Assembly (NCBI GenBank): GCA_002269645.1 | Contig: NIVC01000109.1 | Coordinates: forward strand, 855,670-919,669 | Direction of reading: 5' to 3' | DNA: 64,000 nucleotides | Origin: Macrostomum lignano | Taxonomy: Eukaryota | Part shown: positions 7,024-55,883 of the stretch, in pieces | Numbering within the stretch: the first letter of the stretch is position 1 | Layout of the letters: each line of letters opens with the position of its first letter | Made by a program: the position numbers and the translations under genes | Notes under the pieces: model-generated | Databases searched by the model: none | Seen by the model: only the letters and a program-made list of their open reading frames with translations | Told to the model about the DNA's origin: nothing

Positions 7024-10000
7024 ATGCTTCACGATTTCACCAATTTATTCGAAGATTTGGCCAGAAGTTTCACTCCGGCCTCGCTAATCTGCCTGCTGTC
7101 TATTATTCTGCTGGTGGCGCCAACCAAATGCCAGCTTGCTAATCAGGAGCCCCAGCAGCAGCAACAGCAGATGGCCACAGTGTCTGACCTGCCGATCTAT
7201 CGGCTGCATCAGTTTGACATGTTCGGCTCTCGCTATGGCAGTCGTTCGGCTCAGCTCAATTTTGAAGCTAGAACTGTTGCTTCCGGACAGCTCAATAGAA
7301 AATGCGTGGTTGCCAGGGTTCAGGTGGGTTTTTCTGCTTTCGGAATTGGCCTTTTCCCAGCAAATCCCTCCCTTGCCCTCTGAGAATCACAACACAATCC
7401 AAAATGGCATTCGAATCTCTATTAGAATCGACACTAATCCTCTCCCAGAATCGACACTAATCCTGTCTCAGAATCGACACTAATCCTGTCTCAGAATCGA
7501 CACTAATCCTCTCCCAGAATCGACACTAATCCTCTCCCAGAATCGACACTAATCCTCTCCCAGAATCGACAACTAATCCTCTCCCAGAATCGACACTAAT
7601 CCTCTCCCAGAATCGACAACTAATCCTCTCCCAGAATCGACACTAATCCTCTCCCAGAATCGACAACTAATCCTCTCCCAGAATCGATACTAATCCTCTC
7701 CCAGAATCGACACTAATCCTGTCTCAGAATCGACACTAATCCTCTCCCAGAATCGAAACTAATCCTCTATCAGAATCGACTCTAATCCTCTCCCAGAATC
7801 GAAACTAATCCTCTATCAGAATTGACACTAATCCTCTCCCAGAATCGACACTAATCCTGTCTCAGAATCGACACTAATCCTGTCTCAGAATCGACACTAA
7901 TCCTCTCCCAGAATCGACACTAATCCTGTCTCAGAATCGACACTAATCCTGTCTCAGAATCGACACAAATCCTCTCCCAGAATCGACACTTACCCTCTAT
8001 CAGAACCGACACTAATGCCATCCTGAGATACTGTTAGCAATTTAATCAAGACACATTGATTTCTAACTTGCACGATTCCCCAGGAGCTGTCTGGCGCAGT
8101 GATCAAGCGCCTAGTGCAGGACAACGTGGGCGCCATTCTAGTGTTGGTGCCGCCAGCTCTGCTCCAGGATCCAACTGGCATACCGACTGAGACTCGGGCC
8201 GCTCTGCACTCGCTGGAACAGGTTTGTTTTGCTTTTCTTTGCTTCGCCTCGAATCTCCATGAGAATCGCCCCAAATCTCCATGTGATAATTCCCCTCAAA
8301 GCTCCATGAGATTCGCCCCAAAATCTCAATCAATGAGAATCGCCCCCAAATCTCAATGAGAATCGCCCCCAAATCTCCATGAGAATCGCCCCAAAATCTC
8401 AATTAGAATCGCCCTCAAATCTCCAAAACAATCGCCCCCAAATCTCCATGAGAATCGCCCCCCCCCCCCAAATCCCAATGAGAATCGCCCCCAAATCTCC
8501 ATGAGAATCGCCCCCAAATCTCCATGAGAATCGCCCCCAAATCTCCATGAGAATCGCCCCCAAATCTCCACGAGAATCACCCCAAAATCTCCATGAGAAT
8601 CGCCCCCAAATCTCAATGAGAATCGCCCCCAAATCTCCATGAGAATCGCCCACAAATCTCAATGAGAATCGCCCCCAAATCTCAATGAGAATCGCCCCCA
8701 AATCTCCAAGAGATTCGCCCCCAAATCTCCAAGAGATTCGCCCCCAAATCTCAATGAGAATCGCCCCCAAATCTCCATGACAATCGCCCCCAAATCTCCA
8801 TGAGAATCGCCCCCAAATCTCCACGAGAATCACCCCAAAATCTCCATGAGAATCGCCCCCAAATCTCAATGAGAATCGCCCCCAAATCTCCATGAGAATT
8901 GTCCCCAAATCTCCATGAGAATCGCCCCCAAATCTCCATGAGAATCGCCCTCTCCACCCGCCGCAGGACCTGTGGGGCGACAGCATCCCCGTGCCGGTGT
9001 ACTTCCTGGCCGAGACGCCGGACTTCAGCCGGGTATTTGAGGACATGCGCCGCATTGACCAGTCCAACGATTTCAACTCGCCTCTCCGCCTGATTGCCAA
9101 CTCTGTGCTGGGCAACACGTATCACGTGGCGGCCAGGTCTGCCCAGAGCAAACCGATCGATAGCTTAGAATTTGTTGCTATGCACGGATTCTTGTATCCT
9201 CAAGCCTCATCCGCCGCAGCCGCAGCCGCCGGAGTTGCTCACCAGGGCGGCTCCGAGGGCACCATAGTCATCTCCGCCTACATGGACTGGTTTGGCTCGG
9301 TGCCAACTCTTGGCCGAGGCTTCGATAGCAACGGCAGCGGCATGCTGCTGCTGCTCAGGCTGGCTAGGCTGCTGTCTTATTACTACGGCATGCCTGGAGT
9401 CCGGCCGAAGTACAGCGTGCTCTTCCTATTGACCAGCGGCGGCAAGCTGTCCTATTTCGGTACTAAGCGCTGGATTGAGGACAATCTTGAGTCGCCGGAT
9501 TCAACTGTACTCGCCAGGGTTGTCATGGCCCTGTGTCTGGACTCGGTTGGCCTGGAGCCAGCCGTTAATCTGCACGTGTCCAAGCTGCCCAAGGAGGGCA
9601 CTCTGATGCATGCTTTCTACGACAGAATGCGCAAACACTCGGAGAAGCCCGATTTGGTGAGCTGAAATTCTATCACTGCTCTCTGTTCTTAGACTTCTTT
9701 GCTGCCCTGCTATCTACCGTGAATATCTACCCTCTTTGTCTGCAACTTATCTACCCTGCTATCTACCGTTAACATCTACCCTCTTTGTCTGTAACTTATC
9801 CACCCTGCTATCTACTGTGAATATCTACCCTCTTTGTCTGCAACTTATCTACCCTGCTATCTACCGTTAACATCTACCCTCTTTGTCTGTAACTTATCCA
9901 CCCTGCTATCTACCGTGAATATCTACCCTCTTTGTCTGTAACTTAGCTGCCCTGCTATCTACCGTGAATATCTACCCTCTTTGTCTGCAACTTATCTACC

Positions 10001-12435
10001 CTGCTATCTACCGTTAACATCTACCCTCTTTGTCTGCAACTTATCTACCCTGCTATCTACCGTTAACATCTACCCTCTTTGTCTGTAACTTATCTACCCT
10101 GCTATCTACCGTGAATATCTACCCTCTTTGTCTGCAACTTATCTACCCTGCTATCTACCGTTAACATCTACCCTCTTTGTCTGCAACTTATCTACCCTGC
10201 TATCTACCGTTAACATCTACCCTCTTTGTCTGTAACTTATCCACCCTGCTATCTACCGTGAATATCTACCCTCTTTGTCTGTAACTTATCTACCCTGCTA
10301 TCTACCCTCTCTGCTACCCTGCTACCTACCCTCTCTGCTACCCTGCTACCTACCCTCTATGCTACTCTGCTACCTACCCTCTCTGCTACCCTGCTACCTA
10401 CCCTCTCTGCTACCCTGCTACCTACCCTCTATGCTACCCTGCTACCTACCCTCTCTGCTACCCTGCTACCTACCCTCTATGCTACCCTGCTACCTACCCT
10501 CTCTGCTACCCTGCTACCTACCCTCTCTGCTACCCTGCTACCTACCCTCTCTGCTACCCTGCTACCTACCCTCTCTGCTACCCTGCTACCTACCCTCTCT
10601 GCTACCCTGCTACCTACCCTCTATGCTACCCTGCTACCTACCCTCTCTGCTACCCTGCTACCTACCCTCTATGCTACCCTGCTACCTACCCTCTCTGCTA
10701 CCCTGCTACCTACCCTCCCTGCTACCCTGTTACCTACCCTCTGCTACCCTGCTACCTACCCTCTCTGCTACCCTGCTACCTACCCTCTCTGCTACCCTGC
10801 TACCTACCCTCTCTGCTACCCTGCTACCTACCCTCTCTGCTACCCTGCTACCTACCCTCTATGCTACCCTGCTACCTACCCTCTCTGCTACCCTGCTACC
10901 TACCCTCTCTGCTACCCTGCTACCTACCCTCTCTGCTACCCTGCTACCTACCCTCTCTGCTACCCTGCTACCTACCCTCTCTGCTACCCTGCTACCTACC
11001 CTCTATGCTACCCTGCTACCTACCCTCTCTGCTACCCTGCTACCTACCCTCTATGCTACCCTGCTACCTACCCTCTCTGCTACCCTGCTACCTACCCTCT
11101 ATGCTACCCTGCTACCTACCCTCTCTGCTACCCTGCTACCTACCCTCCCTGCTACCCTGTTACCTACCCTCTCTGCTACCCTGCTACCTACCCTCTCTGC
11201 TACCCTGCTACCTACCCTCTATGCTACCCTGCTACCTACCCTCTCTGCTACCCTGCTACCTACCCTCTCTGCTACCCTGCTACCTACCCTCTCTGCTACC
11301 CTGCTACCTACCCTCTCTGCTACCCTGCTACCTACCCTCTCTGCTACCCTGCTTCCTACCCTCTCTGCTACCCTGCTACCTACCCTCTCTGCTACCCTGC
11401 TACCTACCCTCTCTGCTACCCTGCTACCTACCCTCCCTGCTACCCTGTTACCTACCCTCTGCTACCCTGCTACCTACCCTCTCTGCTACCCTGCTACCTA
11501 CCCTCTCTGCTACCCTGCTACCTACCCTCTCTGCTACCCTGCTACCTACCCTCTCTGCTACCCTGCTACCTACCCTCTCTGCTACCCTGCTACCTACCCT
11601 CTCTGCTACCCTGCTACCTACCCTCTCTGCTACCCTGCTACCTACCCTCTCTGCTACCCTGCTACCTACCCTCTATGCTACCCTGCTACCTACCCTCTCT
11701 GCTACCCTGCTACCTACCCTCTCTGCTACCCTTACCAACCCTCCGCCATCCGTCCAGGTGCAGCTCCGCCAGAAGAAGATCAACCTGGCCAACGAGTGGC
11801 TGCCCTGGGAGCACGAGCGCTTCTCAATCAAGCGCCTGCCGGGCCTCACGCTTAGCCAGTGCCCGTCTCACTCGGACTGCTCCCACCGGCTCAGCGTGCT
11901 GGACAGGCGGATCGACTGGCAACAGCTGGACTCGAACTACAGGACCGTGGCCAAATCCCTGCTGGACCTGCTGCTCAATCCGTCCACGAATGTCACTGAC
12001 GAGCAGATGATGAAGCACGTATATAACGATGTAGACGACTCTGGGGATCCACAATCTGCCTGGACTAGCTATGCTCAACTTCTTGAGCACGATCACCGGT
12101 CCTATCACAATCTGCGTCGCTCAGATCCCTACGTGCAGACCCTGCAGAGCATGCTGTCCCCTCTGGTCAAGGACTACCGGCTGGTCGCCTTCAAACCGGA
12201 TCGGAAGGAACCCGAAGTGGTCGTCTACGACGCCTCAGACTCTGTGCTCAGCGTCTACATTGTGAAACCGGCTCTGTTCGACCTATTCCTTGCCGGACTC
12301 ATCACTGCCTATCTGGCCATTGTGTTCGGCTTTGTTGTTCATTTTCATCGCATTGCCGGACTGTGTCTGGCGCCGCTGCTGGCGCTGCTTTCATCTGGCG
12401 CCAGGCAGTCTAATGGCGGCAAAAGTACGCACTGA
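7024..12435 (+). CDS. NCLN: Nicalin (BOS complex subunit NCLN; inactive M28-like lumenal domain, type I membrane protein), ~601 aa
   Basis: Exons 7024-7323, 8084-8221, 8967-9656, 11758-12435; all GT-AG, phase 0, total 1806 nt. Signal peptide; YRLHQFDMFGSRYGSR; TIVISAYMDWFG..P.L..G.DSNGSG; LTSGGKLSYFGTKRW; KKINLA...WEHERFSIKRLP; C-terminal VKPALFDLFLA TM segment. All are nicalin hallmarks. Confidence 0.93.
7425..7995. repeat. 23-bp minisatellite (gaatcgacactaatcctctccca) in nicalin intron 1
   Basis: Direct tandem copies with period 23. Confidence 0.95.
8250..8950. repeat. ~21-22-bp minisatellite (aaatctccatgagaatcgcccc) in nicalin intron 2
   Basis: Direct tandem copies; explains several spurious minus-strand ORFs. 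Confidence 0.95.
9705..11730. repeat. Composite minisatellite in nicalin intron 3 (longer ccctgctatctaccg..tacc..tttgtct unit grading into a 24-bp ccctgctacctaccctctctgcta unit)
   Basis: Tandem copies; the unit changes near 10290; source of the PCYLPSLL and ATLLPTLS ORFs. Confidence 0.95.
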
Positions 12436-15127: not shown

Positions 15128-17815
15128 TCACTTCGCGCCCGCATCGGCTCCAGAGAGCATCGCCTTCACCGCCTTGTCAACCTTGGCCACCAGTTTCTCC
15201 TGCTTGCCAGCTGGCGACTCCGTCTTGGCCCGCAAGAAGTGCAGCAGCAGCTCCACCAGGGTGTCGGCCTGCTGCTGCCGGCCCTTCACCCGCGCGCAGG
15301 CCAGCAGGCTGAGAGTGGCTGGCGGCAGCGGCCGCTTGCTGATCCCGGCGAAGGCGCAGTCGGGGTCAAAGTAGGTCAGGACGCGGCTCTTGTCCAGCAG
15401 CAGCTCCAGGGTCTCCTCCAGGCGGCCGCAGAAATTCGCCCGAAAATACGCGGTGCCGTCGTCGGATTCAAAGCGGCGCAGCGACTCGCGGACGGAGCCG
15501 CAGGCCAGGAAGCTGAGCTGCGAGTCCGGGCGAGCGATCTCACCTTTGTCCAGGCTGAGCTGCTGGCCCACCTGCAGCAGGAACTTCACGATGCGGACGA
15601 GACGGAGCTTCGGATGGTCGGGACCTTCGGCTCCGGACAGCAGGGCGGCCTGCTCCTCCCTTGAATGGGTGGTTTTTGGGGGACAAAATTGAGATACAGT
15701 CGGGGTTAAGTTGGGATAAACTCGGTCATGAGCTCACTCATGAGCTCACTCATGAACTCACTCATTCACTCACTCCCTCATTCACTCACTCCCCCATTCA
15801 ATCACTCCCTCATTCACTTACTCACTCACTCACTCACTGACTCAATCCACAAACGCACTCATGAACTCACTCATGAACTCACTCATAAACTCACTCATAA
15901 ACGCACTCATGAACTCACTCATGAACTCACTCTTGAATTCACTCATGAACTCACTCATGAACTCACTCATGAAATCACTCATGAACTCACTCATGAACTC
16001 ACTCATGAACTCACTCATGAACTCACTCATGAACTCACTCATGAACTCACTCATGAACTCACTCATAAACTCACTCATGAACTCACTCATAAACTCACTC
16101 ATGAACTCAGTCATGAACTCAGTCATGAGATCATACCACAACAACATACCTAGCCAGGCACAGCATCCTTGGCTGGCTGAAGCCCAGCAGCAGGTGGCCA
16201 AACAATCCGCGGTCCCGGCTGGCCCCGAGCAGTTGGCAGGGAGCTCCGAAGAGCAGCCGCAGGGTGGCCGGCCGCACGCTGCCCGAGCTGGTGTGGCACA
16301 GAACTGGCAGAGTCGCCCGCTTCGGCGACCAGACCATCGCAGAGTCTCCGGCCCCGGCGTTGCAGCTTATGCGGCGACTCGAGTCCGGGCGCACCGGCGA
16401 CTCAGCCGAGTCTTGCAGCACCGCCGCGGCCGTGTTGGCAACGATTCGCTCGACTCCGCACACCAGCGCCTGGTGCACGTTGGTCTCGAATGGCACCCAG
16501 CCGGAGGAGGCGGCCGGCCGCAGCACCGTCTGCGAGATGCCGGCCGTGCCGCAGACGCAGAGCTTGTTGACACGCAGCCAGGCGGGCATGGAGATCACGT
16601 AGTCCAGGGTGGGCTGCGCACAGCGAAGGGCCGTCTCCTGAGCCCAGCTGCCGATCAGGGTGGGGCTGGAGTCCTGCCAGAGAGAAAAAGCAGTGAATCA
16701 CTTGCTCTGGCGCGATCGGCTCTGGATGACCGCGTCACTCTTAGCCCCTCCCTGCCCTAATTGATTGCACAGCCACCTCACTCCCCAGCTCCTCCCTGCC
16801 CCTCTTAATTTCACAGCCAGCCACCTCACTCCCCAGCTCCTCCCTGCCCCTCTTAATTTCACAGCCAGCCACCTCACTCCCCAGCTCCTCCCTGCCCCTC
16901 TTAATTGCACAACCAGCCGCCTCACTCCCCAGCTCCTCCCTTCCCCTCTTAATTGCACAACCAGCCGCCTCACTCCCCAGCTCCTCCCTTCCCCTCTTAA
17001 TTGCACAGCCAGCCACCTCACTCCCCAGCTCCTCCCTGCCCCTCTTAATTGCACAACCAGTCGCCTCACTCCCCAGCTCCTCCCTGCCCCTCTTAATTGC
17101 ACGGCCAGCCACCTCACTCCCCAGCTCCTCCCTGCCCCTCTTAATTGCACGGCCAGCCACCTCACTCCCCAGCTCCTCCCTGCCCCTCTTTACTACACAG
17201 CCATCTCACATCTCACTCATCACAGAGAACAGATAACAGACACAGTCGGCCAACCTTGAACAGCAAGGGCATCATCGGCGCCAGGTGATTGGCGCACAGT
17301 GTGTGCAGAAACTCGGTTGTCAAGTTGATCATCTCGTAGGCTTCGTCGCTGGCGTCGAACCCGAGCTCGCCCTCGCCTCCGGCCAAGTCATGCAGCCGCT
17401 GCACAATCGGCGTCATCGGGTTGAAGGCCATCGCCAGCAGGCGGCCCTGCTCACGACTGTTCAGAGTCGGGCCTTCGGCAGTCCCCGCCGCTGCCAGCTG
17501 CTGCTGGCCGGAGAGCAGCGGGCCGAGGTTCCAGTGCAGGCAGCCGTCATCTTCAGGCTGGCAGTTGGCGCAGAGCCGGCGCCCGACGCCCGGCTGGCTG
17601 AACCGCAGCAGCGCCGCGTGGCTTCGTGCCGCCTGCCTGACCGCATCGCCTTGAATTGCCGCCTCCTCCGCCTCCTCCTCGGGAGCAGCCGCCGCTTCTC
17701 TCTCTTCGTTCGGGCCACCGTTGGACGCCTGCAGGCGCTGCTTGAACGAGCTGGCCTCCTCTTTGATCTTGCCGACCAGCTTCGACATCTTCGTCGGCTG
17801 CCGCTGTTGCTGCAT
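15128..17815 (-). CDS. Mab-21/cGAS-like receptor (cGLR) fold protein, probably catalytically degenerate, ~538 aa
   Basis: Exons 17815-17255, 16673-16150, 15659-15128; GT-AG, phases 0 and 2, total 1617 nt. Motifs in Mab-21 order: LIGSWAQETALRCAQPTLDYVISM (GS...[E/D]hD strand), KRATLPVLC (VDlvPai equivalent), GHLLLG...RMLCLAREEQAALL (wrlSfs..E..ll), PKLRLVRIVKFLL (r..l.llK), LEETLELLLDKSRVLTYFDPDCAF (L..cL....l.hYF.P..nlf). Confidence 0.7.
15725..16125. repeat. 12-bp minisatellite (actcactcatga) in intron 2 of the Mab-21-like gene
   Basis: Tandem copies between the splice sites at 15660 and 16149. Confidence 0.95.
16745..17190. repeat. 48-bp minisatellite in intron 1 of the Mab-21-like gene
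   Basis: Period 48 (e.g. 16771 to 16819), about 9 copies. Confidence 0.95.
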
Positions 17816-19378: not shown

Positions 19379-22300
19379 ATGAAGGTGTTCGAATTTTTTG
19401 AGTATATTCGCACATTTGGCCTTCTATCGTCGGTCGGGCTGCTTGACTTGGGCGATCGGGTCACCTTCCTGCTCAGCGCCATCGTGCTGCTGGTGTGCAG
19501 TCTGGTGATCGGCGCCAAGGAGTACTTCACCAAGTCCATATCCTGCATGCTGCTGCACAAGTTCATCACCCCATTCACCATGATGGACGCGCAGATGATC
19601 GAGAGCTACTGCTGGGTGACCGGAGTTTACCCGCTGCGCATGACCGAGCCGCTGCCGGATGTCAGCGACGAGTGGCTGCTCAAGCATCCAACCATTATTC
19701 GTGAGTTGACCGCCTAGGAGAGGAGGCTGGGGATTGAGTAGAGAAGAGAAGAGGAGAGGAGAAGAGATGAGATGAGAGGAGAGGAGAAGAGGAGAGGAGA
19801 AGAGATGAGATGAGAGGAGAGGAGAAGAGAAGAGATTAGAGGAGAGGAGAAGAGAGGAGAGGAGAGGAGAGGAGAGCAAAGCAGAGGAGAGCAAAGCAGA
19901 GGAGAGCAAAGCAGAGGAGAGCAAAGCAGAGGAGAGCAAAGCAGAGGAAAGCAAAGCAGAGGAGAGCAAAGCAGAGGAGAGCAAAGCAGAGGAGAGCAAA
20001 GCAGAGGAAAGCAAAGCAGAGGAGAGCAAAGCAGAGGAGAGCAAAGCAGAGGAGAGCAAAGCAGAGGAGAGCAAAGCAGAGGAGAGCAAAGCAGAGGAGA
20101 GCAAAGCAGAGGAGAGCAAAGCAGAGGAGAGCAAAGCAGAGGAGAGCAAAGCAGAGGAGAGCAAAGCAGAGGAGAGCAAAGCAGAGGAGAGCAAAGCAGA
20201 GGAGAGCAAAGCAGAGGAGAGCAAAGCAGAGGAGAGCAAAGCAGAGGAGAGCAAAGCAGAGGAGAGCAAAGCAGAGGAGAGCAAAGCAGAGAAGAGCAAA
20301 GCAGAGGAGACCAGGGTTCATACCAGTCTGCACACTGCTAGACTAGTGATATATGTAAAATCAGGTAAACTAACCCAATAAACAGCCGCCGCACTTCCGA
20401 CTTCACCAACCGATCCCTCCGCAGGTTATTACCTGTGGGTGCCGCTGCTACTTGCGCTGCAGGCTCTGCTGTGCTACCTGCCGAAAGCGCTGTTTGATTT
20501 GATCTGCTTCAGCCGCTCAGCTTACTGCTTGAGCTTCATCGCTGTCTCCGCCCGGGAGGCGTCGCTGCTGTCGCCAGCCAGACGGGCGGAGAGAGTCGAC
20601 GAGCTGGCGACTTGCCTGGCCGACCTGCTGGTGGCGTCGCGGGAGTACCGGCAAGGCCGGGCGGTCAAGTGGGCCACCGCGGTGCACCGCTGCCTTCCGT
20701 GGTGCCCCATCAGCAAGAGATTCGGTAACTACACCTTTGTGATGTACCTGGTAACCAAACTGGCGGGCCTGGCAGTCTTGCTGTTGCAGCTGGAGCTGAT
20801 GAGGCAGTTTCTCGGCTTCCAGTCTTTGTCGTATGGCGCCGAACTGATGCGAAATATCACTATGGGACTGGACTGGGAGATCACCATGGTGCTGCCCAGG
20901 TAAGCACTACTCTATGCCCAGGTGTGTGTGTGTGTGTGTGTGTTTGAGTGAGTGAGTGAGTGAGTGAGTGAGTGAGTGTGTGAGTGAGTGAGTGAATGAG
21001 TGAGTGCGTGAGTGAGTGAGTGAGTGAGTGAGTGAGTGAGTGAGTGAGTGAGTGAGTGAGTGAGTGAGTGAGTGCGTGAGTGAGTGAGTGAGTGAGTGAG
21101 TGAGTGAGTGAGTGAGTGAGTGAGTGAGTGAGTGAGTGAGTGCGTGATTGAGTGAGTGAGTGAGTGAGTGAGTGAGTGAGTGAGTGCGTGAGTGAGTGAG
21201 TGCGTGAGTGTGTGAGTGCGTGAGTGAGTGAGTGAGTGAGTGCGTGAGTGAGTGAGTGAGTGAGTGAGTGAGTGAGTGAGTGCGTGATTGAGTGAGTGAG
21301 TGAGTGAGTGAGTGAGTGAGTGAGTGAGTGAGTGCGTGAGTGAGTGAGTGAGTGAGTGAGTGAGTGAGTGCGTGAGTGAGTGAGTGAGTGAGTGAGTGCG
21401 TGAGTGAGTGAGTGAGTGAGTGAGTGAGTGAGTGAGTGAGTGAGTGAGTGAGTGAGTGAGTGAGTGAGTGAGTGAGTGAGTGAGTGAGTGAGTGAGTGAG
21501 TGAGTGAGTGAGTGAGTGAGTGAGTGAGTGAGTGTGTGAGTGAGTGAGTGAATGAGTGAGTGCGTGAGTGAGTGAGTGAGTGAGTGAGTGAGTGAGTGAG
21601 TGAGTGAGTGAGTGAGTGAGTGAGTGCGTGAGTGAGTGAGTGAGTGAGCGAGTGAGTGAGTGAGTGAGTGAGTGAGTGAGTGAGTGCGTGATTGAGTGAG
21701 TGAGTGAGTGAGTGAGTGAGTGAGTGAGTGCGTGAGTGAGTGAGTGCGTGAGTGTGTGAGTGCGTGAGTGAGTGAGTGAGTGAGTGAGTGCGTGAGTGAG
21801 TGAGTGAGTGAGTGAGTGAGTGCGTGCGTGATTGAGTGAGTGAGTGAGTGAGTGAGTGAGTGAGTGAGTGAGTGCGTGAGTGGGTGAGTGAGTGAGTGAG
21901 TGCGTGAGTGAGTGAGTGAGTGAGTGAGTGAGTGCGTGAGTGAGTGAGTGCGTGAGTGAGTGAGTGAGTGAGTGAGTGAGTGAGTGAGTGAGTGTGTGAG
22001 TGAGTGTGTGTGTTTTAGTCTGTGCGCTAGTTGATGTGTGTCTTTGTGCAATGTCTGTTCGAGCTCATATCCCATTTGTACTGAACAAATTACCTGCATA
22101 TACCTGGTGTATTTTCTAATTAAAAAACGACATTCCAGGCTCGGCGCATGCCGCTTCTCTTTCCCCGACCGAACCAGCGTAATCAGCGTCACTCCCTACT
22201 GCACCATCAGCTCCAACATTTTCACCGAGAAGGTGTACATCATCCTGTGGTTCTACTTTGTCCTGGCTGCCATTGTTAACTCAGCCAGCATACTGCTCTG

Positions 22301-23383: not shown

Positions 23384-23599
23384 ACTCTGCTGCTGTCACA
23401 GCTCTTTTTGTGTCTCATTTTCTAACACGCTTGTCTCCAATATTCTATCGTGAACTTTTACATTTTTGTACGATCGAAGCGCTACAAACCGAATGTCTCA
23501 TTTTCCGGAATTAACTAATTCTAGCCAGTATGTGATTTTTCTAACTCTTGAAAGCTGAGAAATGATTTCTGAGTTGAATTCAGTTGCCAGGCAACAGTG

Positions 23600-26500
23600 G
23601 CTTTAGCACCAAGGGGCTTTAGCACCAAGGGGCTTTAGCACCCGGGGCTTTAGCACCGAGGGTCTTTAGCACCAAGTGGCTATAGCACCAGGGGCTTTAG
23701 CACCAAGGGGCTTTAGCACCAAGGGGCTTTAGCACCAAGGGGCTTTAGCACCAAGGGGCTTTAGCACCAAGGGGCTTTAGCACCCGGGGCTTTAGCACCG
23801 AGGGTCTTTAGCACCAAGTGGCTATAGCACCAGGGGCTTTAGCACCAAGGGGCTTTAGCACCAAGGGGCTTTAGCACCCGGGGCTTTAGCACCGAGGGTC
23901 TTTAACACCAAGGGGCTTTAGCACCAAGGGGCTTTAGCACCCGGGGCTTTAGCACCAAGGGGCTTTAACACCAAGGGGCTTTAGCACCAAGGGGCTTTAG
24001 CACCAAGGGGCTTTAGCACCAAGGGGCTTTAGCACCAAGGGGCTTTAGCACCAAGGGGCTTTAGCACCAAGGGGCTTTAGCACCAAGGGGCTTTAGCACC
24101 AAGGGGCTTTAGCACCAAGGGGCTTTAGCACCAAGGGGCTTTAGCACCAAGGGGCTTTAGCACCAAGGGGCTTTAGCACCAAGGGGCTTTAGCACCAAGG
24201 GCTTTAGCACCAAGGGGCTTTAGCACCAAGGGGCTTTAGCACCAAGGGGCTTTAGCACCAAGGGGCTTTAGCACCAAGGGGCTTTAGCACCAAGGGGCTT
24301 TAGCACCAAGGGGCTTTAGCACCAAGGGGCTTTAGCACCAAGGGGCTTTAGCACCAAGGGGCTTTAGCACCAAGGGGCTTTAGCACCAAGGGGCTTTAGC
24401 ACCAAGGGGCTTTAGCACCAAGGGGCTTTAGCACCAAGGGGCTTTAGCACCAAGGGGCTTTAGCACCAAGGGGCTTTAGCACCAAGGGGCTTTAGCACCA
24501 AGGGGCTTTAGCACCAAGGGGCTTTAGCACCAAGGGGCTTTAGCACCAAGGGGCTTTAGCACCAAGGGGCTTTAGCACCAAGGGGCTTTAGCACCAAGGG
24601 GCTTTAGCACCAAGGGGCTTTAGCACCAAGGGGCTTTAGCACCAAGGGGCTTTAGCACCAAGGGGCTTTAGCACCAAGGGGCTTTAGCACCAAGGGGCTT
24701 TAGCACCAAGGGGCTTTAGCACCAAGGGGCTTTAGCACCAAGGGGCTTTAGCACCAAGGGGCTTTAGCACCAAGGGGCTTTAGCACCAAGGGGCTTTAGC
24801 ACCAAGGGGCTTTAGCACCAAGGGGCTTTAGCACCAAGGGGCTTTAGCACCAAGGGGCTTTAGCACCAAGGGGCTTTAGCACCAAGGGGCTTTAGCACCA
24901 AGGGGCTTTAGCACCAAGGGGCTTTAGCACCAAGGGGCTTTAGCACCAAGGGGCTTTAGCACCAAGGGGCTTTAGCACCAAGGGGCTTTAGCACCAAGGG
25001 GCTTTAGCACCAAGGGGCTTTAGCACCAAGGGGCTTTAGCACCAAGGGGCTTTAGCACCAAGGGGCTTTAGCACCAAGGGGCTTTAGCACCAAGGGGCTT
25101 TAGCACCAAGGGGCTTTAGCACCAAGGGGCTTTAGCACCAAGGGGCTTTAGCACCAAGGGGCTTTAGCACCAAGGGGCTTTAGCACCAAGGGGCTTTAGC
25201 ACCAAGGGGCTTTAGCACCAAGGGGCTTTAGCACCAAGGGGCTTTAGCACCAAGGGGCTTTAGCACCAAGGGGCTTTAGCACCAAGGGGCTTTAGCACCA
25301 AGGGGCTTTAGCACCAAGGGGCTTTAGCACCAAGGGGCTTTAGCACCAAGGGGCTTTAGCACCAAGGGGCTTTAGCACCAAGGGGCTTTAGCACCAAGGG
25401 GCTTTAGCACCAAGGGGCTTTAGCACCAAGGGGCTTTAGCACCAAGGGGCTTTAGCACCAAGGGGCTTTAGCACCAAGGGGCTTTAGCACCAAGGGGCTT
25501 TAGCACCAAGGGGCTTTAGCACCAAGGGGCTTTAGCACCAAGGGGCTTTAGCACCAAGGGGCTTTAGCACCAAGGGGCTTTAGCACCAAGGGGCTTTAGC
25601 ACCAAGGGGCTTTAGCACCAAGGGGCTTTAGCACCAAGGGGCTTTAGCACCAAGGGGCTTTAGCACCAAGGGGCTTTAGCACCAAGGGGCTTTAGCACCA
25701 AGGGGCTTTAGCACCAAGGGGCTTTAGCACCAAGGGGCTTTAGCACCAAGGGGCTTTAGCACCAAGGGGCTTTAGCACCAAGGGGCTTTAGCACCAAGGG
25801 GCTTTAGCACCAAGGGGCTTTAGCACCAAGGGGCTTTAGCACCAAGGGGCTTTAGCACCAAGGGGCTTTAGCACCAAGGGGCTTTAGCACCAAGGGGCTT
25901 TAGCACCAAGGGGCTTTAGCACCAAGGGGCTTTAGCACCAAGGGGCTTTAGCACCAAGGGGCTTTAGCACCAAGGGGCTTTAGCACCAAGGGGCTTTAGC
26001 ACCAAGGGGCTTTAGCACCAAGGGGCTTTAGCACCAAGGGGCTTTAGCACCAAGGGGCTTTAGCACCAAGGGGCTTTAGCACCAAGGGGCTTTAGCACCA
26101 AGGGGCTTTAGCACCAAGGGGCTTTAGCACCAAGGGGCTTTAGCACCAAGGGGCTTTAGCACCAAGGGGCTTTAGCACCAAGGGGCTTTAGCACCAAGGG
26201 GCTTTAGCACCAAGGGGCTTTAGCACCAAGGGGCTTTAGCACCAAGGGGCTTTAGCACCAAGGGGCTTTAGCACCAAGGGGCTTTAGCACCAAGGGGCTT
26301 TAGCACCAAGGGGCTTTAGCACCAAGGGGCTTTAGCACCAAGGGGCTTTAGCACCAAGGGGCTTTAGCACCAAGGGGCTTTAGCACCAGCTTTAGCACCA
26401 AGGGCTTTAGCACCAAGGGGCTTTAGCACCAAGGGGCTTTAGCACCAAGGGGCTTTAGCACCAAGGGGCTTTAGCACCAAGGGGCTTTAGCACCAAGGGG

Positions 26501-28310
26501 CTTTAGCACCAAGGGGCTTTAGCACCAAGGGGCTTTAGCACCAAGGGGCGGGGCTTTAGCACCAAGGGGCTTTAGCACCAAGGGGCTTTAGCACCAAGGG
26601 GCTTTAGCACCAAGGGGCTTTAGCACCAAGGGGCTTTAGCACCAAGGGGCTTTAGCACCAAGGGGCTTTAGCACCAAGGGGCTTTAGCACCAAGGGGCTT
26701 TAGCACCAAGGGGCTTTAGCACCAAGGGGCTTTAGCACCAAGGGGCTTTAGCACCAAGGGGCTTTAGCACCAAGGGGCTTTAGCACCAAGGGGCTTTAGC
26801 ACCAAGGGGCTTTAGCACCAAGGGGCTTTAGCACCAAGGGGCTTTAGCACCAAGGGCTTTAGCACCAAGGGGCTTTAGCACCAAGGGGCTTTAGCACCAA
26901 GGGGCTTTAGCACCAAGGGGCTTTAGCACCAAGGGGCTTTAGCACCAAGGGGCTTTAGCACCAAGGGGCTTTAGCACCAAGGGGCTTTAGCACCAAGGGG
27001 CTTTAGCACCAAGGGGCTTTAGCACCAAGGGGCTTTAGCACCAAGGGGCTTTAGCACCAAGGGGCTTTAGCACCAAGGGGCTTTAGCACCAAGGGGCTTT
27101 AGCACCAAGGGGCTTTAGCACCAAGGGGCTTTAGCACCAAGGGGCTTTAGCACCAAGGGGCTTTAGCACCAAGGGGCTTTAGCACCAAGGGGCTTTAGCA
27201 CCAAGGGGCTTTAGCACCAAGGGGCTTTAGCACCAAGGGGCTTTAGCACCAAGGGGCTTTAGCACCAAGGGGCTTTAGCACCAAGGGGCTTTAGCACCAA
27301 GGGGCTTTAGCACCAAGGGGCTTTAGCACCAAGGGGCTTTAGCACCAAGGGGCTTTAGCACCAAGGGGCTTTAGCACCAAGGGGCTTTAGCACCAAGGGG
27401 CTTTAGCACCAAGGGGCTTTAGCACCAAGGGGCTTTAGCACCAAGGGGCTTTAGCACCAAGGGGCTTTAGCACCAAGGGGCTTTAGCACCAAGGGGCTTT
27501 AGCACCAAGGGGCTTTAGCACCAAGGGGCTTTAGCACCAAGGGGCTTTAGCACCAAGGGGCTTTAGCACCAAGGGGCTTTAGCACCAAGGGGCTTTAGCA
27601 CCAAGGGGCTTTAGCACCAAGGGGCTTTAGCACCAAGGGGCTTTAGCACCAAGGGGCTTTAGCACCAAGGGGCTTTAGCACCAAGCTTTAGAACCAAGGG
27701 GCTTTAGAACCAAGGGGCTTTAGCACCAAGGGGCTTTAGCACCAAGGGGCTTTAGCACCAAGGGGCTTTAGCACCAAGGGGCTTTAGCACCAAGGGGCTT
27801 TAGCACCAAGGGGCTTTAGCACCAAGGGCTTTAGCACCAAGGGGCTTTAGCACCAAGGGGCTTTAGCACCAAGGGGCTTTAGCACCAAGGGGCTTTAGCA
27901 CCAAGGGGCTTTAGCACCAAGGGGCTTTAGCACCAAGGGGCTTTAGCACCAAGGGGCTTTAGCACCAAGGGGCTTTAGCACCAAGGGGCTTTAGCACCAA
28001 GGGGCTTTAGCACCAAGGGGCTTTAGCACCAAGGGGCTTTAGCACCAAGGGGCTTTAGCACCAAGGGGCACCAAGGGGCTTTAGCCAAGGGGCTTTAGCA
28101 CCAAGGGGCTTTAGCACCAAGGGGCTTTAGCACCAAGGGGCTTTAGCACCAAGGGGCTTTAGCACCAAGGGGCTTTAGCACCAAGGGGCTTTAGCACCAA
28201 GGGGCTTTAGCACCAAGGGGCTTTAGCACCAAGGGGCTTTAGCACCAAGGGGCTTTAGCACCAGAGGCTTTAGCACCAGAGCACCAGAGGGCTTTAGCAC
28301 CAGAGGCGCC
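23600..28310. repeat. 4.7-kb homogeneous 16-bp satellite (ggggctttagcaccaa)n
   Basis: Near-perfect core, variant units at both edges. Confidence 0.98.
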
Positions 28311-31750: not shown

Positions 31751-31840
31751 ATCAGGCCGGTGCTCCACCAGAATCCGCCACGCCCTCCCCATCCCCAACC
31801 GCAGGCGCTCCTGCAGTGACCGCGCGCCCCAGCCGCCGAC

Positions 31841-34800
31841 ATGCGCCTCTTCCGCTGCCTGCGCCGCGGCTCGGGCTGCTCTCCTCTGCTCTCATTGCTG
31901 CTGCTGCTGCTGCTGTTGCTATTCGTGTACTCGGTCGGCCGGGGCTGGATCTACTTCACCTGGGAGGAGCCGGCCTGGCTGCAGCTCACCGGAGACCCCC
32001 AAATTGACGCGAGAATCCGCCAGCTGGCCGCAGCAAGCCGGCCTCGCCGACTGAATTTGAGCAGCCGATGCGACGGCCGGATACCGCTGCTGCTGCACCA
32101 GATCTACACCAGCGACAGCGTGCCAGAGCTGTACAGGCACTCCATCGCCTCCTGCATTCGTCGGCATCCGGACTTTGTCTACGTGCTCTGGACAGATACT
32201 GAGGCGAGAAGATTTGTAGCGGCAAACTACCCGGCCTACCTGGCCATGTTCGACGGATACAAGAACACCTTGCAGAGATCCGATGCCCTGCGCTACTTCA
32301 TTCTGTACCACTTTGGAGGTGACGGCACTGAATTCTAGGGCTGACAGCTTCCTGTACCCACAAGGGATTTCCTACAGGGGATTTCCCCCAATGGGTTTCC
32401 CGCAAGGGGTTTCCCGCAAGGGGTTTCCCGCAAGGGGTTTCCCGCAAGGGGTTTCCCGCAAGGGGTTTCCCGCAAGGGGTTTCCCGCAAGGGGTTTCCCG
32501 CAAGGGGTTTCCCGCAAGGGGTTTCCCGCAAGGGGTTTCCCGCAAGGGGTTTCCCGCAAGGGGTTTCCCGCAAGGGGTTTCCCGCAAGGGGTTTCCCGCA
32601 AGGGGTTTCCCGCAAGGGGTTTCCCGCAAGGGGTTTCCCGCAAGGGGTTTCCCGCAAGGGGTTTCCCGCAAGGGGTTTCCCGCAAGGGGTTTCCCGCAAG
32701 GGGTTTCCCGCAAGGGGTTTCCCGCAAGGGGTTTCCCGCAAGGGGTTTCCCGCAAGGGGTTTCCCGCAAGGGGTTTCCCGCAAGGGGTTTCCCGCAAGGG
32801 GTTTCCCGCAAGGGGTTTCCCGCAAGGGGTTTCCCGCAAGGGGTTTCCCGCAAGGGGTTTCCCGCAAGGGGTTTCCCGCAAGGGGTTTCCCGCAAGGGGT
32901 TTCCCGCAAGGGGTTTCCCGCAAGGGGTTTCCCGCAAGGGGTTTCCCGCAAGGGGTTTCCCGCAAGGGGTTTCCCGCAAGGGGTTTCCCGCAAGGGGTTT
33001 CCCGATTTATCAAAAAATATATCCCACAGGGGATTTCCATAGGGATTTCCCTCAGGTTATTGTTAGAGATGATTTCTACAGGGATTTTCCATAGAAGACT
33101 TTGACTTGGATCTTCCTATAGCAATTTATTTTGGCAAGAATTTCCTAAGAGTCCATTTTGCTGCGGCACCAATTATTCCTGGAAATCATAAACTCTACTT
33201 TAGCCGTAGTATTTGAATCAAGCTCTCATTGCATTGGACAACGGGATGGAATATCTCCAGCAACAAAAAATATTGCTGAAAGAGAAAAAGCCAGGAAAAA
33301 TTTCCTGAAAGTCTGAAATTTCTCAGCTATTAATGTCCTGCAGCCCCCCAGCCCTGCCATCTCTGGGCCACTGCAGCTAAATGGGGGCCTGCTTCTCTCG
33401 ACGCATGAAATATTGATGGTATTTTTTTCTAATCCGCAGCAGCATATGGAAGGGGAAAAATTGAGGGGGAAGAAATCCCAAACTATTGTTCCTGAGACGC
33501 TGCTTGCTCCAAAACAATGGCATGCATAAAAATTGCTTGTTGTAGCGGCCATAAATCCAAGTATCAACATTCTATTGTGATATTTGAAATGTACATCTCT
33601 AGTGTGTAATGTTTGGAATGTACATCTCTAGTGTGTAATTTTTGGAATGTACATCTCTAGTGTGTAATGTTTGGAATGTACATCCCTAGTGAGCAGTGAC
33701 TCACTCCCCTAACAACACCGTCAACAGGAGTGTACATCGACATGGATGTACACTGCCTTCAACCGTTCGACACTCTGGTGGCAACAGAGGCCTGCTTCTT
33801 CGATCAGGAGCGCCCAGAGCAGACTCAAATCCTTCACGGCACTGAGTACTCGGTGATGAACTCGGTCATTGGCTGCGTCAAGAAGCACCCGTTTCTAGCA
33901 AAAGTGATTCAGAATTTACCACGAAAGAAGGACGGTAAGTAATGAAATAGCTTTTGAAGTGCTAGCTGAGATATACCTCAGTGGACTGAGAGACTGTCAA
34001 ATGTTCACCTTGGCTTCTCGTTCACCAGTTGACGACATAATCAGTTCAACGGGTCCTCTCTACCTGACACAGCAGTACCAGCAGTACATTGCTGAGGTGC
34101 CAAAATTGGGGAGTCAGCGACTGCGACTACTGAGCCCGAGTGTGTTTTCACCTCTGCTGGACATGTCTGCACTTCTGAACTCCGTCTGCGGTAAGTGCTA
34201 AAGCCAATTAATTAACTACTACAGTAAAACAAAACAACAATAATCGTATGTAATCGCCGCGCTTTGCCCAGAGTCTAAAAATAGCTCGCGTACATTGACA
34301 CCGCACAGTCAGAGATTAATCCACTTTGCCCAGAGTCTAAAAATAGCTCGCGTACATTGACACCGCACAGTCAGAGATTGATCCACTTTGCCCAGAGTCT
34401 AAAAATAGCTCGCGTACATTGACACCGCACAGTCAGAGATTGATCCACTTTGGCCAGAGTCTAAAAATAGCTCGCGTACATTGACACCGCACAGTCAGAG
34501 ATTGATCCACTTTAGCCAGAGTCTAAAAATAGCTCGCGTACATTGACACCGCACAGTCAGAGATTGATCCACTCTGCCCATAGTCTAAAAATAGCTCGGG
34601 TACATCAAGACTAACGCACATTACGGATCTAAAAATAGCACAGCAGATTGAAAGCTGATTTCTTAATGGCTTATTTGATAACGAAAAGAGGGCACTGTGT
34701 ACTTCATAGAATTTTTTATCTGACTTTTATCTCGCCACTGTTTTTTCATCCAATAAAGAACGCCTGCTGAATCCGACAAAAAGACCGGCGGTATTCCACA

Positions 34801-37489: not shown

Positions 37490-39447
<1,958 letters not shown>

Positions 39448-39609: not shown

Positions 39610-40179
39610 CTGTTTGGCAGATGGGGCTTCTCTTTCTCTGCCCTCTCTCTCTCTCCCTCTCTCTCCCTACTCTCCAGTGTACTGTGCAGCTGCGCACAAG
39701 CACTCGGCAGTGTACACTGAGTCCTGTGCATACAAAATGCATTTGCCACATTGTGCGTGCTTTTCTACAACACAAGGGACTGATAAACAAACAAGGATGT
39801 TGAGAAAATAGGACTGAAGCAGCCAGGTGATAAGCATTTGCCAGAGAGCGAACTTCTGAGTCATGTTTGTGAATTACCAAAACTCATCGAAAGCACACAA
39901 CCTTATTGCAGTCATTGAAAGGTAGTTTTATCAGTGCTTTATTATCTTTTAAACTTGACTGGGGTGGTCACAAGGTGTTTTAAAACAAGGTTATGACTGG
40001 AATAAGTGCAGCGTTCGTCTGCGGTTTTTAGAATCCGGAATGACCTGCTATGACTAAATTTAACACAAATGCATACTATTTTTGGAAATGCTTCAATTTG
40101 GCTACAGGAAGTTAAAGCAGCCAAATGCTACCTCCAGAGGCTGTCCTTAGATTACTGTTTCTACTGCATGTCATGTATC

Positions 40180-46100: not shown

Positions 46101-46570
46101 TAGTGTCTGTCCTAGTATCTTAGTGTCTGTCCTAGTATCTTAGTGTCTGTCCTAGTATCTTAGTGTCTGTCCTAGTGTCTTAGTGTCTTAGTGTCTGTCC
46201 TAGTGTCTTAGTGTCTTAGTGTCTGTCCTAGTATCTTAGTGTCTTAGTGTCTGTCCTAGTATCTTAGTGTCTGTCCTAGTATCTTAGTGTCTGTCCTAGT
46301 ATCTTAGTGTCTGTCCTAGTATCTTAGTGTCTGTCCTAGTGTCTTAGTGTCTGTCCTAGTATCTTGGTGTCTTAGTGTCTGTCCTAGTGTCTTAGTATCT
46401 TAGTGTCTGTCCTAGTATCTTAGTGTCTGTCCTAGTGTCTTAGTGTCTGTCCTAGTGTCTTAGTGTCTGTCCTAGTATCTTAGTGTCTTAGTGTCTGTCC
46501 TAGTGTCTTAGTGTCATAGTGTCTGTCCAAGTATCTTAGTGTCTGTCCTAGTGTCTTAGTGTCTGTCCTA
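40180..46570. repeat. 6.4-kb satellite built from two units, gtgtctta (8 bp) and gtgtctgtccta (12 bp)
   Basis: Units interleave as AB/AAB; internal 1520-bp higher-order duplication; degenerate tail to ~46800. Confidence 0.98.
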
Positions 46571-47139
46571 GGGTTTTGGTGTCTGTTCTAGTGTCTATCT
46601 TAGTATGTGTCTTCTTGTGTGTCTTAGTGTGTGTCTTAGTGTCTGTCTTAGTGTTCGTTTCAGTCTCTTTATTAGCGTCTATCTTAGTGTGTGTCTTAGT
46701 GTACGTCTTAGTATGTGTGTTAGTATGTGTCCTAGTGTATGTAGTGAGTGTCTTCGTGTGTGTCTCTGAGTGAATTCAGTGTCTGTCTCAGTATCTGTCC
46801 TGGACCTTTCTCTCTACCCCCGTGCCCGCACTCCGCTTGTGCACCCCATTCGTGTCTCACTGACATTGTTAAACTGTATGACGCATAGTCCGCGTGTTTC
46901 GCTAGCGCAAGTTTTCCTGGCCAAGAACTGGGCCGCCAATTTCCGAGGCATTCTGCTGTTTCCCTTCGCGTCGTTAAACCGCATCCGGAATATCAGAGAG
47001 TGCAGATTGCGTTCATGGCTGAATTCTCGGGCCGTTTTCCGGTTAAAATATGAAATTAATACGATTTGAACTTCTTGGTAAAGGCACTGGCGGAAACTGC
47101 AATTATATTTTACAATTTTTATAACAAGTTAGGTTCTTA

Positions 47140-54519: not shown

Positions 54520-55615
<1,096 letters not shown>

Positions 55616-55883
55616 CTATCTATAGCTGGATTTATTGATTGACGGCTTCAGCTCAACTAGTCATGGAACCCCAACTGTTTCAGGTCTGCAAGCCTATTTT
55701 AAGCAGTCAGATATTCACTGGATTATTATTTCAGTTAAAAATAATCTTAAAGAATAAAAAGCAACTGCATTTTTCTCGGTCTTTTCGGCTCGAGTTTTTT
55801 TGCAAATCGCTTATTTAGAATTTTAGGCTAAGGCGACTTTCTAAATTGTTGCTAATTTCATCACCCAGGGCGAGGCTGGCGCA

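What the first reader, a model, noticed from the sequence alone, without database searches (positions are those of the whole stretch)
15128..17815. cGAS/Mab-21-fold gene that looks like a pseudo-enzyme, near the TNF array
Seen: the spliced 538-aa protein keeps the NTase GS motif and the C-terminal Mab-21 helical motifs. By manual alignment the metal-binding triad is degraded: E/D-h-D reads T-L-D, and the third Asp strand reads RATLPVL. The N-terminal extension has C-x2-C-x6-C-x-H (CANCQPEDDGCLH), a possible zinc site. Known: cGAS-like receptors need all three acidic residues to make cyclic dinucleotides, while MiD49/51 and MAB21L are fold-retaining non-cyclases. Inference: a catalytically dead cGLR acting as a nucleotide sensor, adaptor or decoy, ~20 kb from a cytokine cluster.
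Basis: partly seen in the sequence, partly recalled or inferred. Interest (0 to 1): 0.72.

Follow-up and report, generated by a model that had tools for sequence, protein, structure and literature searches.

The report
Flatworm orphan, possibly a dead cGAS-like protein
This is a real three-exon gene of the flatworm Macrostomum lignano that standard tools cannot place in any family; a custom comparison gives weak but consistent evidence that it is a very diverged cGAS-like protein lacking two of the three catalytic acidic residues, which is a known kind of non-enzyme relative.

Summary
The gene is real. Three GT-AG exons on the minus strand (17815-17255, 16673-16150, 15659-15128) encode 538 aa, identical to GenBank PAA90499.1 of Macrostomum lignano.

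The family assignment is not confirmed by standard tools.
- Pfam finds no Mab-21 domain, while genuine M. lignano cGLRs hit Mab-21_C at 1e-8 to 1e-13.
- PDB sequence and profile searches find nothing.
- AlphaFold2 fails (pLDDT 35-39), so Foldseek is uninformative.
- Among about 15 billion proteins the only relative is one M. lignano paralog (31% identity).

A profile I built from 32 published cGLRs matches the helix-GS-Asp region in register. hhalign gives P 2e-5 and probability 76% for that segment, and 48% for the whole protein. Two weaker hits (P about 0.1) fall at colinear positions.

In that alignment the triad reads T209 / D211 / R326 (M / D / N in the paralog).

The proposed zinc motif is not conserved beyond CxxC. 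The nearest significant TNF-like exon is about 31 kb away, with other genes in between.

Verdict: probably a lineage-specific, inactive NTase-fold protein. Modest interest.

The parts
17255..17815 (-). Exon 1 (codons 1-187). Contains the low-complexity, helical N-terminal extension, the CxxC motif and most of the predicted long helix that precedes the GS loop.
   Evidence: ATG at 17815, donor AAG|GTTGGC. 100% identical in the two other genomic copies.
16674..17254 (-). Intron 1, mostly a 48-bp tandem repeat (16770-17203, 9 copies).
   Evidence: It is 144 bp (3 units) longer in copy L002 and 143 bp longer in L003 (exon coordinates).
16150..16673 (-). Exon 2 (codons 188-362). Holds the putative NTase core: GS loop, TLD strand, CxC, helix, beta-hairpin and the LGFS stretch.
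   Evidence: hhalign match to the cGLR N-lobe.
15660..16149 (-). Intron 2, mostly a 12-bp tandem repeat (15726-16128, 33.5 copies).
   Evidence: It is 24 bp (2 units) shorter in copy L003 (exon coordinates).
15128..15659 (-). Exon 3 (codons 362-538 plus stop). Helical C-terminal half.
   Evidence: Between genomic copies, 5 of 6 substitutions are synonymous and 1 is V522I.
16647..16652 (-). G195-S196, the candidate NTase 'GS' loop. Conserved in the paralog (LIGSWA).
   Evidence: Aligned to the cGLR GS by hmmsearch for the paralog and by hhalign.
16602..16610 (-). T209-L210-D211, the position of the [DE]h[DE] catalytic pair. Only the second acidic residue is kept (M-M-D in the paralog).
   Evidence: for the register; for the coordinates.
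16239..16265 (-). T324-LRLLFGAP, the candidate strand of the third catalytic Asp. R326 (16257-16259) sits at the Asp column (N in the paralog).
   Evidence: segment hhalign, colinear, but P only 0.1. Paralog alignment.
16299..16319 (-). It aligns instead with the preceding PAVTL strand of cGLRs.
17534..17572 (-). Only C82 and C85 (17561-17572) are conserved in the paralog.
16551..16559 (-). C226-V-C228, a second conserved cysteine pair (N.LC.CG in both paralogs).
   Evidence: A similar C-rich patch follows the Asp strand in some M. lignano cGLRs.
15350..15472 (-). Residues 425-465 (AYFRANF...LELLL...TYFDPDCAF). Weak colinear match to the cGLR C-lobe element W..eNL...L..L...hYFIP..NLF.
   Evidence: P 0.07-0.13.
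16223..16226 (-). G4 run in codons 336-337. The two other genomic copies have G3 here, which is why they are annotated as a frameshifted 385-aa product.

Best explanation
The locus encodes a Macrostomum-restricted, fast-evolving cytosolic protein. Its central part is most likely a highly diverged cGAS/cGLR-type nucleotidyltransferase fold: a long helix, a GS loop, a beta-strand with one Asp, a helix, a beta-hairpin and a helical C-lobe.

In the best alignment the three metal-binding carboxylate positions read T209 / D211 / R326 (M / D / N in the paralog). The protein therefore cannot run two-metal nucleotidyl transfer and is a pseudo-enzyme.

Inferred, not shown: it keeps the GS loop and one Asp, so it may still bind a nucleotide or a partner. 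It would then act non-catalytically as a scaffold or regulator, as other inactive Mab-21-fold proteins do. The conserved CxxC (82-85) and CxC (226-228) pairs may form a structural metal site that ties the N-terminal extension to the core.
For: The gene is real and under constraint.
- It is an exact match to an annotated M. lignano protein with GT-AG introns.
- A paralog is conserved over about 400 aa (E 2e-20).
- Exons are 99.6-100% identical between three genomic copies. The flanks are 87-98% and intron 1 about 97% identical; intron 2 is as conserved as the exons (98.9-99.8%).
- 5 of 6 exon-3 substitutions are synonymous.

Fold evidence.
- hhalign of the 2-sequence family against 20 cGLRs scores 31.8 (P 0.0022). 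200 column shuffles gave mean 13.8 and maximum 25; the reversed alignment gave 16.3.
- Against 32 cGLRs the score is 38.4 (P 1.9e-4, probability 48%). For segment 140-250 it is P 2.3e-5, probability 76%. 60 shuffles gave a maximum of 19.5.
- The register is the same in four profile builds (20, 15, 12 and 32 cGLRs): GS on GS and D211 on cGAS D227.
- hmmsearch with the 32-sequence HMM ranks the paralog first and this protein second of 1004 sequences, 1000 of them shuffles.
- Segment 250-345 hits the PAVTL/ISVDI strands (P 0.1). Segment 400-470 hits the W..NL...YFIP element (P 0.076). Both are colinear.
- As a control, genuine M. lignano cGLRs match other cGLRs in the N-lobe only at P 0.044. Weak N-lobe similarity is therefore normal inside this family.

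No transmembrane segment is present: the maximum Kyte-Doolittle score over 19 residues is 1.28.
Against: - Pfam gives no Mab-21 or Mab-21_C hit at E<=10 for the protein, the paralog or four sub-segments. Genuine M. lignano cGLRs hit Mab-21_C at 8.6e-13 and 1.5e-8.
- PDB phmmer and profile searches are empty.
- The C-lobe, which is the best-conserved part of true cGLRs (P 5e-23 in the control), is not significantly similar here (P 0.07-0.13).
- An independent 12-sequence cGLR profile gave only P 0.06-0.15, and hmmsearch ranks 157 and 229 of 1004.
- Against the five M. lignano cGLRs alone there is no N-lobe hit.
- AlphaFold2 gives pLDDT 39 and 35. Foldseek on that model returns noise.
- Column shuffles are a lenient null.
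- The third catalytic position rests on a P 0.1 alignment.
- Nothing here bears on ligand binding or function.
Confidence: 0.5

Rival explanations
1. It is an orphan, lineage-specific protein of another, unknown fold. The GS...D and YF.PD resemblances to cGLRs are chance matches of short motifs in a Leu/Ala-rich sequence.
For: There are no Pfam or PDB hits. The replicate profile is not significant. The C-lobe is never significant. The protein alone scored 0.5 bits and off-register with the first HMM. Only two family members exist among about 15 billion proteins.
Against: The signal grows as the cGLR profile deepens, from P 2e-3 to 2e-4, and to 2e-5 for the segment. The register is the same in four profile builds (20, 15, 12 and 32 cGLRs). 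Three separate segments land in colinear order. Both members beat all 1000 shuffles.
Confidence: 0.3
2. It is a decaying duplicate of a cGLR gene, that is a pseudogene or a gene on the way to loss, with no function of its own.
For: Two of the three acidic residues are lost. Two of the three genomic copies carry a 1-bp shorter G-run and are annotated as truncated 385-aa products. The sequence is extremely divergent.
Against: The 538-aa frame is open across three exons. The paralog keeps blocks of identity over about 400 aa. Exon-3 differences between copies are 5 synonymous and 1 conservative in the full-length frame, even in the 'frameshifted' copies. Exons are much more conserved than the flanks and intron 1, though intron 2 is equally conserved. 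The G3/G4 difference lies in a homopolymer and may be an assembly error.
Confidence: 0.12
3. It is still an active nucleotidyltransferase that uses a non-canonical set of metal ligands.
For: The GS loop and D211 are retained and conserved.
Against: The aligned first and third positions are T/M and R/N in the two paralogs. Neither candidate strand of the hairpin region (RATLPVLC, TLRLLFGAP) contains an acidic residue. From established knowledge of Pol-beta-type NTases and cGAS mutagenesis, loss of these carboxylates abolishes catalysis.
Confidence: 0.05

Closest known systems
Animal cGAS-like receptors (cGLRs), including the five M. lignano cGLRs listed by Li et al. 2023 (PAA86972, PAA45980, PAA57558, PAA93208, PAA68676; PMC9980059 supplement 3)
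   Same: The order of elements is the same: long helix, hGS loop, Asp-bearing strand 12-13 residues later, helix, beta-hairpin, helical C-lobe ending in a YF.PD-type element. The N-lobe profile match is in register. A Cys-rich patch follows the Asp strand, as in some M. lignano cGLRs.
   Different: The active-site motif h[QT]GS-X8-20-[DE]h[DE]h-X50-90-h[DE]h is not met: the sequence reads LIGS-x12-TLDYV...TLRLL. There is no Pfam Mab-21_C hit, while the true M. lignano cGLRs have one. The C-lobe similarity is not significant. The protein has a roughly 150-aa N-terminal extension.
Catalytically inactive Mab-21-fold proteins (MAB21L1/2/3, MiD49, MiD51). My own knowledge, plus the Figure 1 legend of PMC9980059, which says Mab21L1/2/3 lack a predicted functional active site
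   Same: The concept is the same: an NTase or cGAS-like fold retained without the catalytic carboxylates and used non-enzymatically.
   Different: Those proteins are recognised by the Pfam Mab-21 models and are widely conserved. This one is not recognised and is restricted to one genus. It has no N-terminal membrane anchor like MiD49/51. Ligand binding is unknown.
Vertebrate cGAS
   Same: The best-aligned template region is the cGAS spine helix, the G212-S213 loop and the E225/D227 strand.
   Different: There is no zinc thumb H(X5)CC(X6)C between the LGFS and IVKFLL elements; only C359 and H377 lie there (read). The protein has no basic N-terminus. Two of the three catalytic residues are absent.

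Membership tests
cGLR as defined by Li et al. 2023 (PMC9980059) | Active-site motif h[QT]GS [X8-20] [DE]h[DE]h [X50-90] h[DE]h | tested here: not met
   The sequence reads L-I-G195-S196, x12, T209-L-D211-Y. The candidate third strand is T-L-R326-L-L. The paralog reads M-M-D and V-N-L.
cGLR as defined by Li et al. 2023 (PMC9980059) | [quoted passage not shown] | tested here: inconclusive
   N-lobe: hhalign P 1.9e-4 to 2.3e-5, probability 48-76%, against 32 cGLRs. It falls to P 0.06-0.15 against an independent 12-sequence profile. C-lobe: P 0.07-0.13 at a colinear position.
cGLR as defined by Li et al. 2023 (PMC9980059) | AlphaFold2-predicted structural homology to cGLR/CD-NTase enzymes | tested here: inconclusive
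   AlphaFold2 with 1 or 2 sequences gave pLDDT 39.1 and 34.6. Foldseek against PDB found no hit at E<=0.001. No deeper alignment exists in the databases searched.
Pfam Mab-21 (PF03281) / Mab-21_C (PF20266) | Score above the gathering threshold of either model | tested here: not met
   No hit at E<=10 for the protein, the paralog or four sub-segments. Positive controls PAA86972 and PAA93208 hit Mab-21_C at 8.6e-13 and 1.5e-8.
Pol-beta-type nucleotidyltransferase fold superfamily | hG[GS] loop followed by a strand with [DE]h[DE] and a third carboxylate on a later strand | tested here: inconclusive
   The GS loop is present and conserved. Only one of the three carboxylates (D211) is present in the aligned positions. 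The fold itself was not demonstrated.
MiD49/MiD51-type Mab-21 pseudo-enzymes | N-terminal transmembrane anchor to the mitochondrial outer membrane | tested here: not met
   The maximum Kyte-Doolittle hydropathy over 19 residues is 1.28, at residues 256-274. The N-terminus is hydrophilic.
Vertebrate-type cGAS DNA sensor | Zinc thumb H(X5)CC(X6)C between the NTase core and the C-lobe | tested here: not met
   Residues 354-384 contain only C359 and H377 (sequence).
Any of the above | Nucleotide binding, cyclase activity or a signalling partner (STING or another receptor) | not testable with these tools
   This needs biochemistry.

The most novel reading that the evidence does not exclude
Macrostomum carries a previously unrecognised, extremely diverged and catalytically dead offshoot of its own cGLR expansion. 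The offshoot has two paralogs, each with homeologs, an N-terminal extension and a Cys4 metal site. It acts as a ligand-binding regulator or decoy of cGLR signalling in a phylum that is otherwise said to have largely lost this pathway.
Probability: 0.12. Interest if true: 0.5.

Novelty: new member of a known kind. Interest (0 to 1): 0.3.

Why it matters
If the fold assignment holds, some cGLR-derived proteins have drifted beyond the reach of Pfam, PSI-BLAST-type surveys and shallow-alignment AlphaFold2. Censuses restricted to complete active sites would then undercount the non-catalytic side of the family. It would also add a regulator candidate in one of the few flatworms with cGLRs. Inactive Mab-21-fold proteins are already a well-known category, however, and nothing here points to a new mechanism. 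The practical value is mainly a better annotation of a 'hypothetical protein'.

Tried and rejected
- Pfam hmmscan of the whole protein, the paralog and four sub-segments found nothing relevant.
- PDB phmmer and profile hmmsearch found nothing.
- Three word-indexed homology searches, one with low-complexity regions trimmed, and one exhaustive HMMER scan of 1.84 billion representatives found only the protein itself and one M. lignano paralog.
- AlphaFold2 with a single sequence and with the 2-sequence alignment gave unusable models. Foldseek on the poor model returned noise.
- hhalign against the five M. lignano cGLRs alone was not significant.
- Global hhalign produced a meaningless alignment.
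- The UniRef names attached to cluster members (HECT domain, Peptidase A2, Mediator 13, protein kinase) are rejected. They come from fused gene models that run into neighbouring genes or retroelements.
- Full-text searches of the held papers found no occurrence of Mlig002013 and no paper focused on cGAS in M. lignano.
Full report
**What is there.** The window is from the flatworm Macrostomum lignano (assembly GCA_002269645.1, scaffold NIVC01000109.1). On the minus strand, three exons (17815-17255, 16673-16150, 15659-15128) joined at GT-AG introns give a 538-aa ORF. This ORF is 100% identical to GenBank PAA90499.1, 'hypothetical protein BOX15_Mlig002013g1'. Both introns consist mostly of tandem repeats: a 48-mer array at 16770-17203 and a 12-mer array at 15726-16128.

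**Is it a real, constrained gene?** Two further genomic copies exist (L002 and L003), and both keep the same innexin neighbour.
- Exon 1 is 100% identical in both copies.
- Exon 2 differs only by one base in a G4 run (window 16223-16226, codons 336-337).
- Exon 3 has 4-6 substitutions. Read in the 538-aa frame, five are synonymous and one is V522I.
- The flanks are only 87-98% identical and intron 1 about 97%, although intron 2 is 98.9-99.8%.

This pattern argues for purifying selection on the full-length frame. The G3/G4 difference, which makes the other two copies annotated as 385-aa products, lies in a homopolymer. It may be an assembly error or a very recent lesion, and I cannot decide which. 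A paralog (P0004, full length inside the fused model P0005) shares 31% identity over about 400 aa (E 2e-20). The conserved blocks are LIGSWA, D[YF]V, P.W..N.LC.CG, FET.VHQA, T..L.FG.P, GHLL.G.S, CLA.EE and RLVR..KF.

**Standard family assignment fails.**
- Pfam hmmscan at E<=10 gives no Mab-21 or any other relevant domain. This holds for the protein, the paralog and four sub-segments.
- PDB phmmer and a family-profile hmmsearch give nothing.
- An exhaustive HMMER scan of 1.84 billion cluster representatives finds only the protein and its paralog. Three word-indexed searches agree.
- AlphaFold2 with one or two sequences yields pLDDT 39 and 35. Foldseek against PDB on such a model returns only noise.

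**A targeted test.** Li et al. 2023 (PMC9980059) define cGLRs by three criteria: the motif h[QT]GS-X8-20-[DE]h[DE]h-X50-90-h[DE]h, homology over both lobes, and AlphaFold2 similarity. They state that most platyhelminths have no cGLRs beyond Mab21-like proteins. Even so, their screening table lists five M. lignano cGLRs, none of which is this protein. I took 32 diverse cGLR sequences from that table and built profiles from them.
- 20 sequences: hhalign of the 2-sequence family scores 31.8 (P 0.0022). The match covers the long helix, the GS loop and the Asp strand. 200 column shuffles gave mean 13.8, sd 2.3 and maximum 25; the reversed alignment gave 16.3.
- 20-sequence HMM: hmmsearch put the paralog first of 1004 sequences (7.2 bits), aligned in register. 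The protein itself scored only 0.5 bits and off-register.
- 12 other sequences, as an independent replicate: the same register, but P only 0.06-0.15 and no hmmsearch signal.
- All 32 sequences: hhalign scores 38.4 (P 1.9e-4, probability 48%) for the whole family. Segment 140-250 gives P 2.3e-5 and probability 76%. 60 shuffles gave a maximum of 19.5. hmmsearch ranks the paralog first and the protein second of 1004.
- Separate segments against the 32-sequence profile: 250-345 lands on the PAVTL/ISVDI strands (P 0.1), and 400-470 lands on the W..NL...L..L...YFIP..NL element (P 0.076). Both positions are colinear. Segment 340-405 does not land where expected.
- Controls: true M. lignano cGLRs match other cGLRs very strongly in the C-lobe (P 5e-23) but only at P 0.044 in the N-lobe. 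They also hit Pfam Mab-21_C at 1e-8 to 1e-13.

The N-lobe similarity of this protein is therefore as good as that between genuine members. The C-lobe, normally the conserved part, is not detectably similar. I put the chance of a true cGLR/NTase-type fold at roughly two in three.

**The catalytic positions.** In every profile alignment G195-S196 pairs with the cGLR GS, T209 with cGAS E225 and D211 with D227. The paralog has M-M-D at the same place. The third Asp column falls on R326 in T-L-R-L-L-F-G, and on N in the paralog's T-V-N-L-R-F-G. This last alignment is weak. Neither candidate strand contains an acidic residue. From established knowledge of Pol-beta-type NTases and cGAS mutants, that precludes two-metal catalysis.

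**Other claims.**
- The proposed zinc site C-x2-C-x6-C-x-H is not conserved. Only C82 and C85 persist in the paralog; C92 and H94 become T and V.
- Five of the 16 cysteines are conserved (positions, conservation). They include the pairs CxxC (82/85) and CxC (226/228), which could form a different structural metal site. This is inference.
- There is no cGAS-type zinc thumb and no transmembrane anchor.
- The TNF-like array is real. Exons at 48935-49270, 57096-57554, 60930-61358 and 63803-64000 are mutually similar. Their profile hits a single-chain APRIL/BAFF fusion construct (4zch) and EDA structures at about 1e-7, although single-sequence Pfam scores are below threshold.
- The nearest significant exon of that array is about 31 kb from the gene. 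An innexin gene (20382-20900) and a glycosyltransferase gene (31820-32335) lie between them. Nothing links the two functionally.

**Mechanism and verdict.** Best-supported reading (confidence about 0.5): a Macrostomum-specific, rapidly diverged, catalytically inert NTase-fold protein, probably an offshoot of the cGLR/Mab-21 lineage, acting non-enzymatically. Shown: the gene, the constraint, the paralog, the motif register and the absence of two carboxylates at the aligned positions. Inferred: the fold itself, any nucleotide or partner binding, and any immune role.

Rivals:
- an orphan of unrelated fold with chance motifs (about 0.3);
- a decaying duplicate (about 0.12);
- a non-canonical active enzyme (about 0.05).

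The protein is not a cGLR by the published definition and not a Pfam Mab-21 member. At most it works like the known inactive Mab-21-fold proteins. Novelty is modest, because fold-retaining dead NTases are a known kind. Interest 0.3.

Noticed in passing
window 48935-49270, 57096-57554, 60930-61358, 63803-64000 (+ strand): A tandem array of four TNF-homology-domain exons or genes. Each alone is below the Pfam TNF threshold (E 0.03-0.06). A profile of the four hits a single-chain APRIL/BAFF fusion construct (4zch) and ectodysplasin structures at about 1e-7. A weak extra tblastn match lies at 38309-38479 on the minus strand (E 0.05-0.45).
   Followed up: partly
L002 4287-4809 and L003 4286-4808; window 16223-16226: The two other genomic copies of the gene have GGG instead of GGGG in exon 2 and are annotated as frameshifted 385-aa proteins (PAA55766, PAA82361). 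Their exon 3 still evolves synonymously in the full-length frame. This is either a homopolymer assembly error or a very recent frameshift.
   Followed up: partly
window 16770-17203 and 15726-16128; L002, L003: Both introns are tandem-repeat arrays, and their copy number differs between genomic copies. Intron 1 is 3 units of 48 bp longer in L002 (143 bp longer in L003). Intron 2 is 2 units of 12 bp shorter in L003.
   Followed up: yes
whole window, e.g. 23599-28278, 40178-46596, 10290-11743, 54520-55622: The window is packed with long tandem-repeat arrays: 35 TRF rows with score >=200. They include a 16-mer repeated 294 times and a 6.4-kb 20/28/48-mer array. Many mechanical ORFs in the window are just translated repeats.
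   Followed up: no
P0003 and P0005 (UniRef A0A1I8HHW7, A0A1I8IF59): The UniRef names attached to this family (HECT domain, Peptidase A2, Mediator subunit 13, protein kinase) come from giant fused gene models of an older assembly. Those models run through neighbouring genes and a retroelement gag/protease, so the names are misleading.
   Followed up: partly
PMC9980059 supplement 3, rows 89-93: Li et al. list five M. lignano cGLRs with complete active sites, although the text says most platyhelminths lack cGLRs. M. lignano therefore has a small lineage-specific cGLR expansion. Two of the five were checked here and hit Pfam only with Mab-21_C.
   Followed up: partly
window 20382-20900 (+), 31820-32335 (+), 8919-9662 (+): Neighbouring exons with clear Pfam hits: innexin (E 4e-19), a glycosyltransferase DXD sugar-binding region (E 1e-11) and an M28 peptidase-like region (E 6.5e-5). 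The innexin neighbour is conserved next to all three copies of the gene.
   Followed up: partly
window 17561-17572 and 16551-16559 (minus strand): Two cysteine pairs, C82-x2-C85 and C226-x-C228, are conserved between the paralogs, while most other cysteines are not. They may form a four-Cys metal site bridging the N-terminal extension and the core.
   Followed up: no
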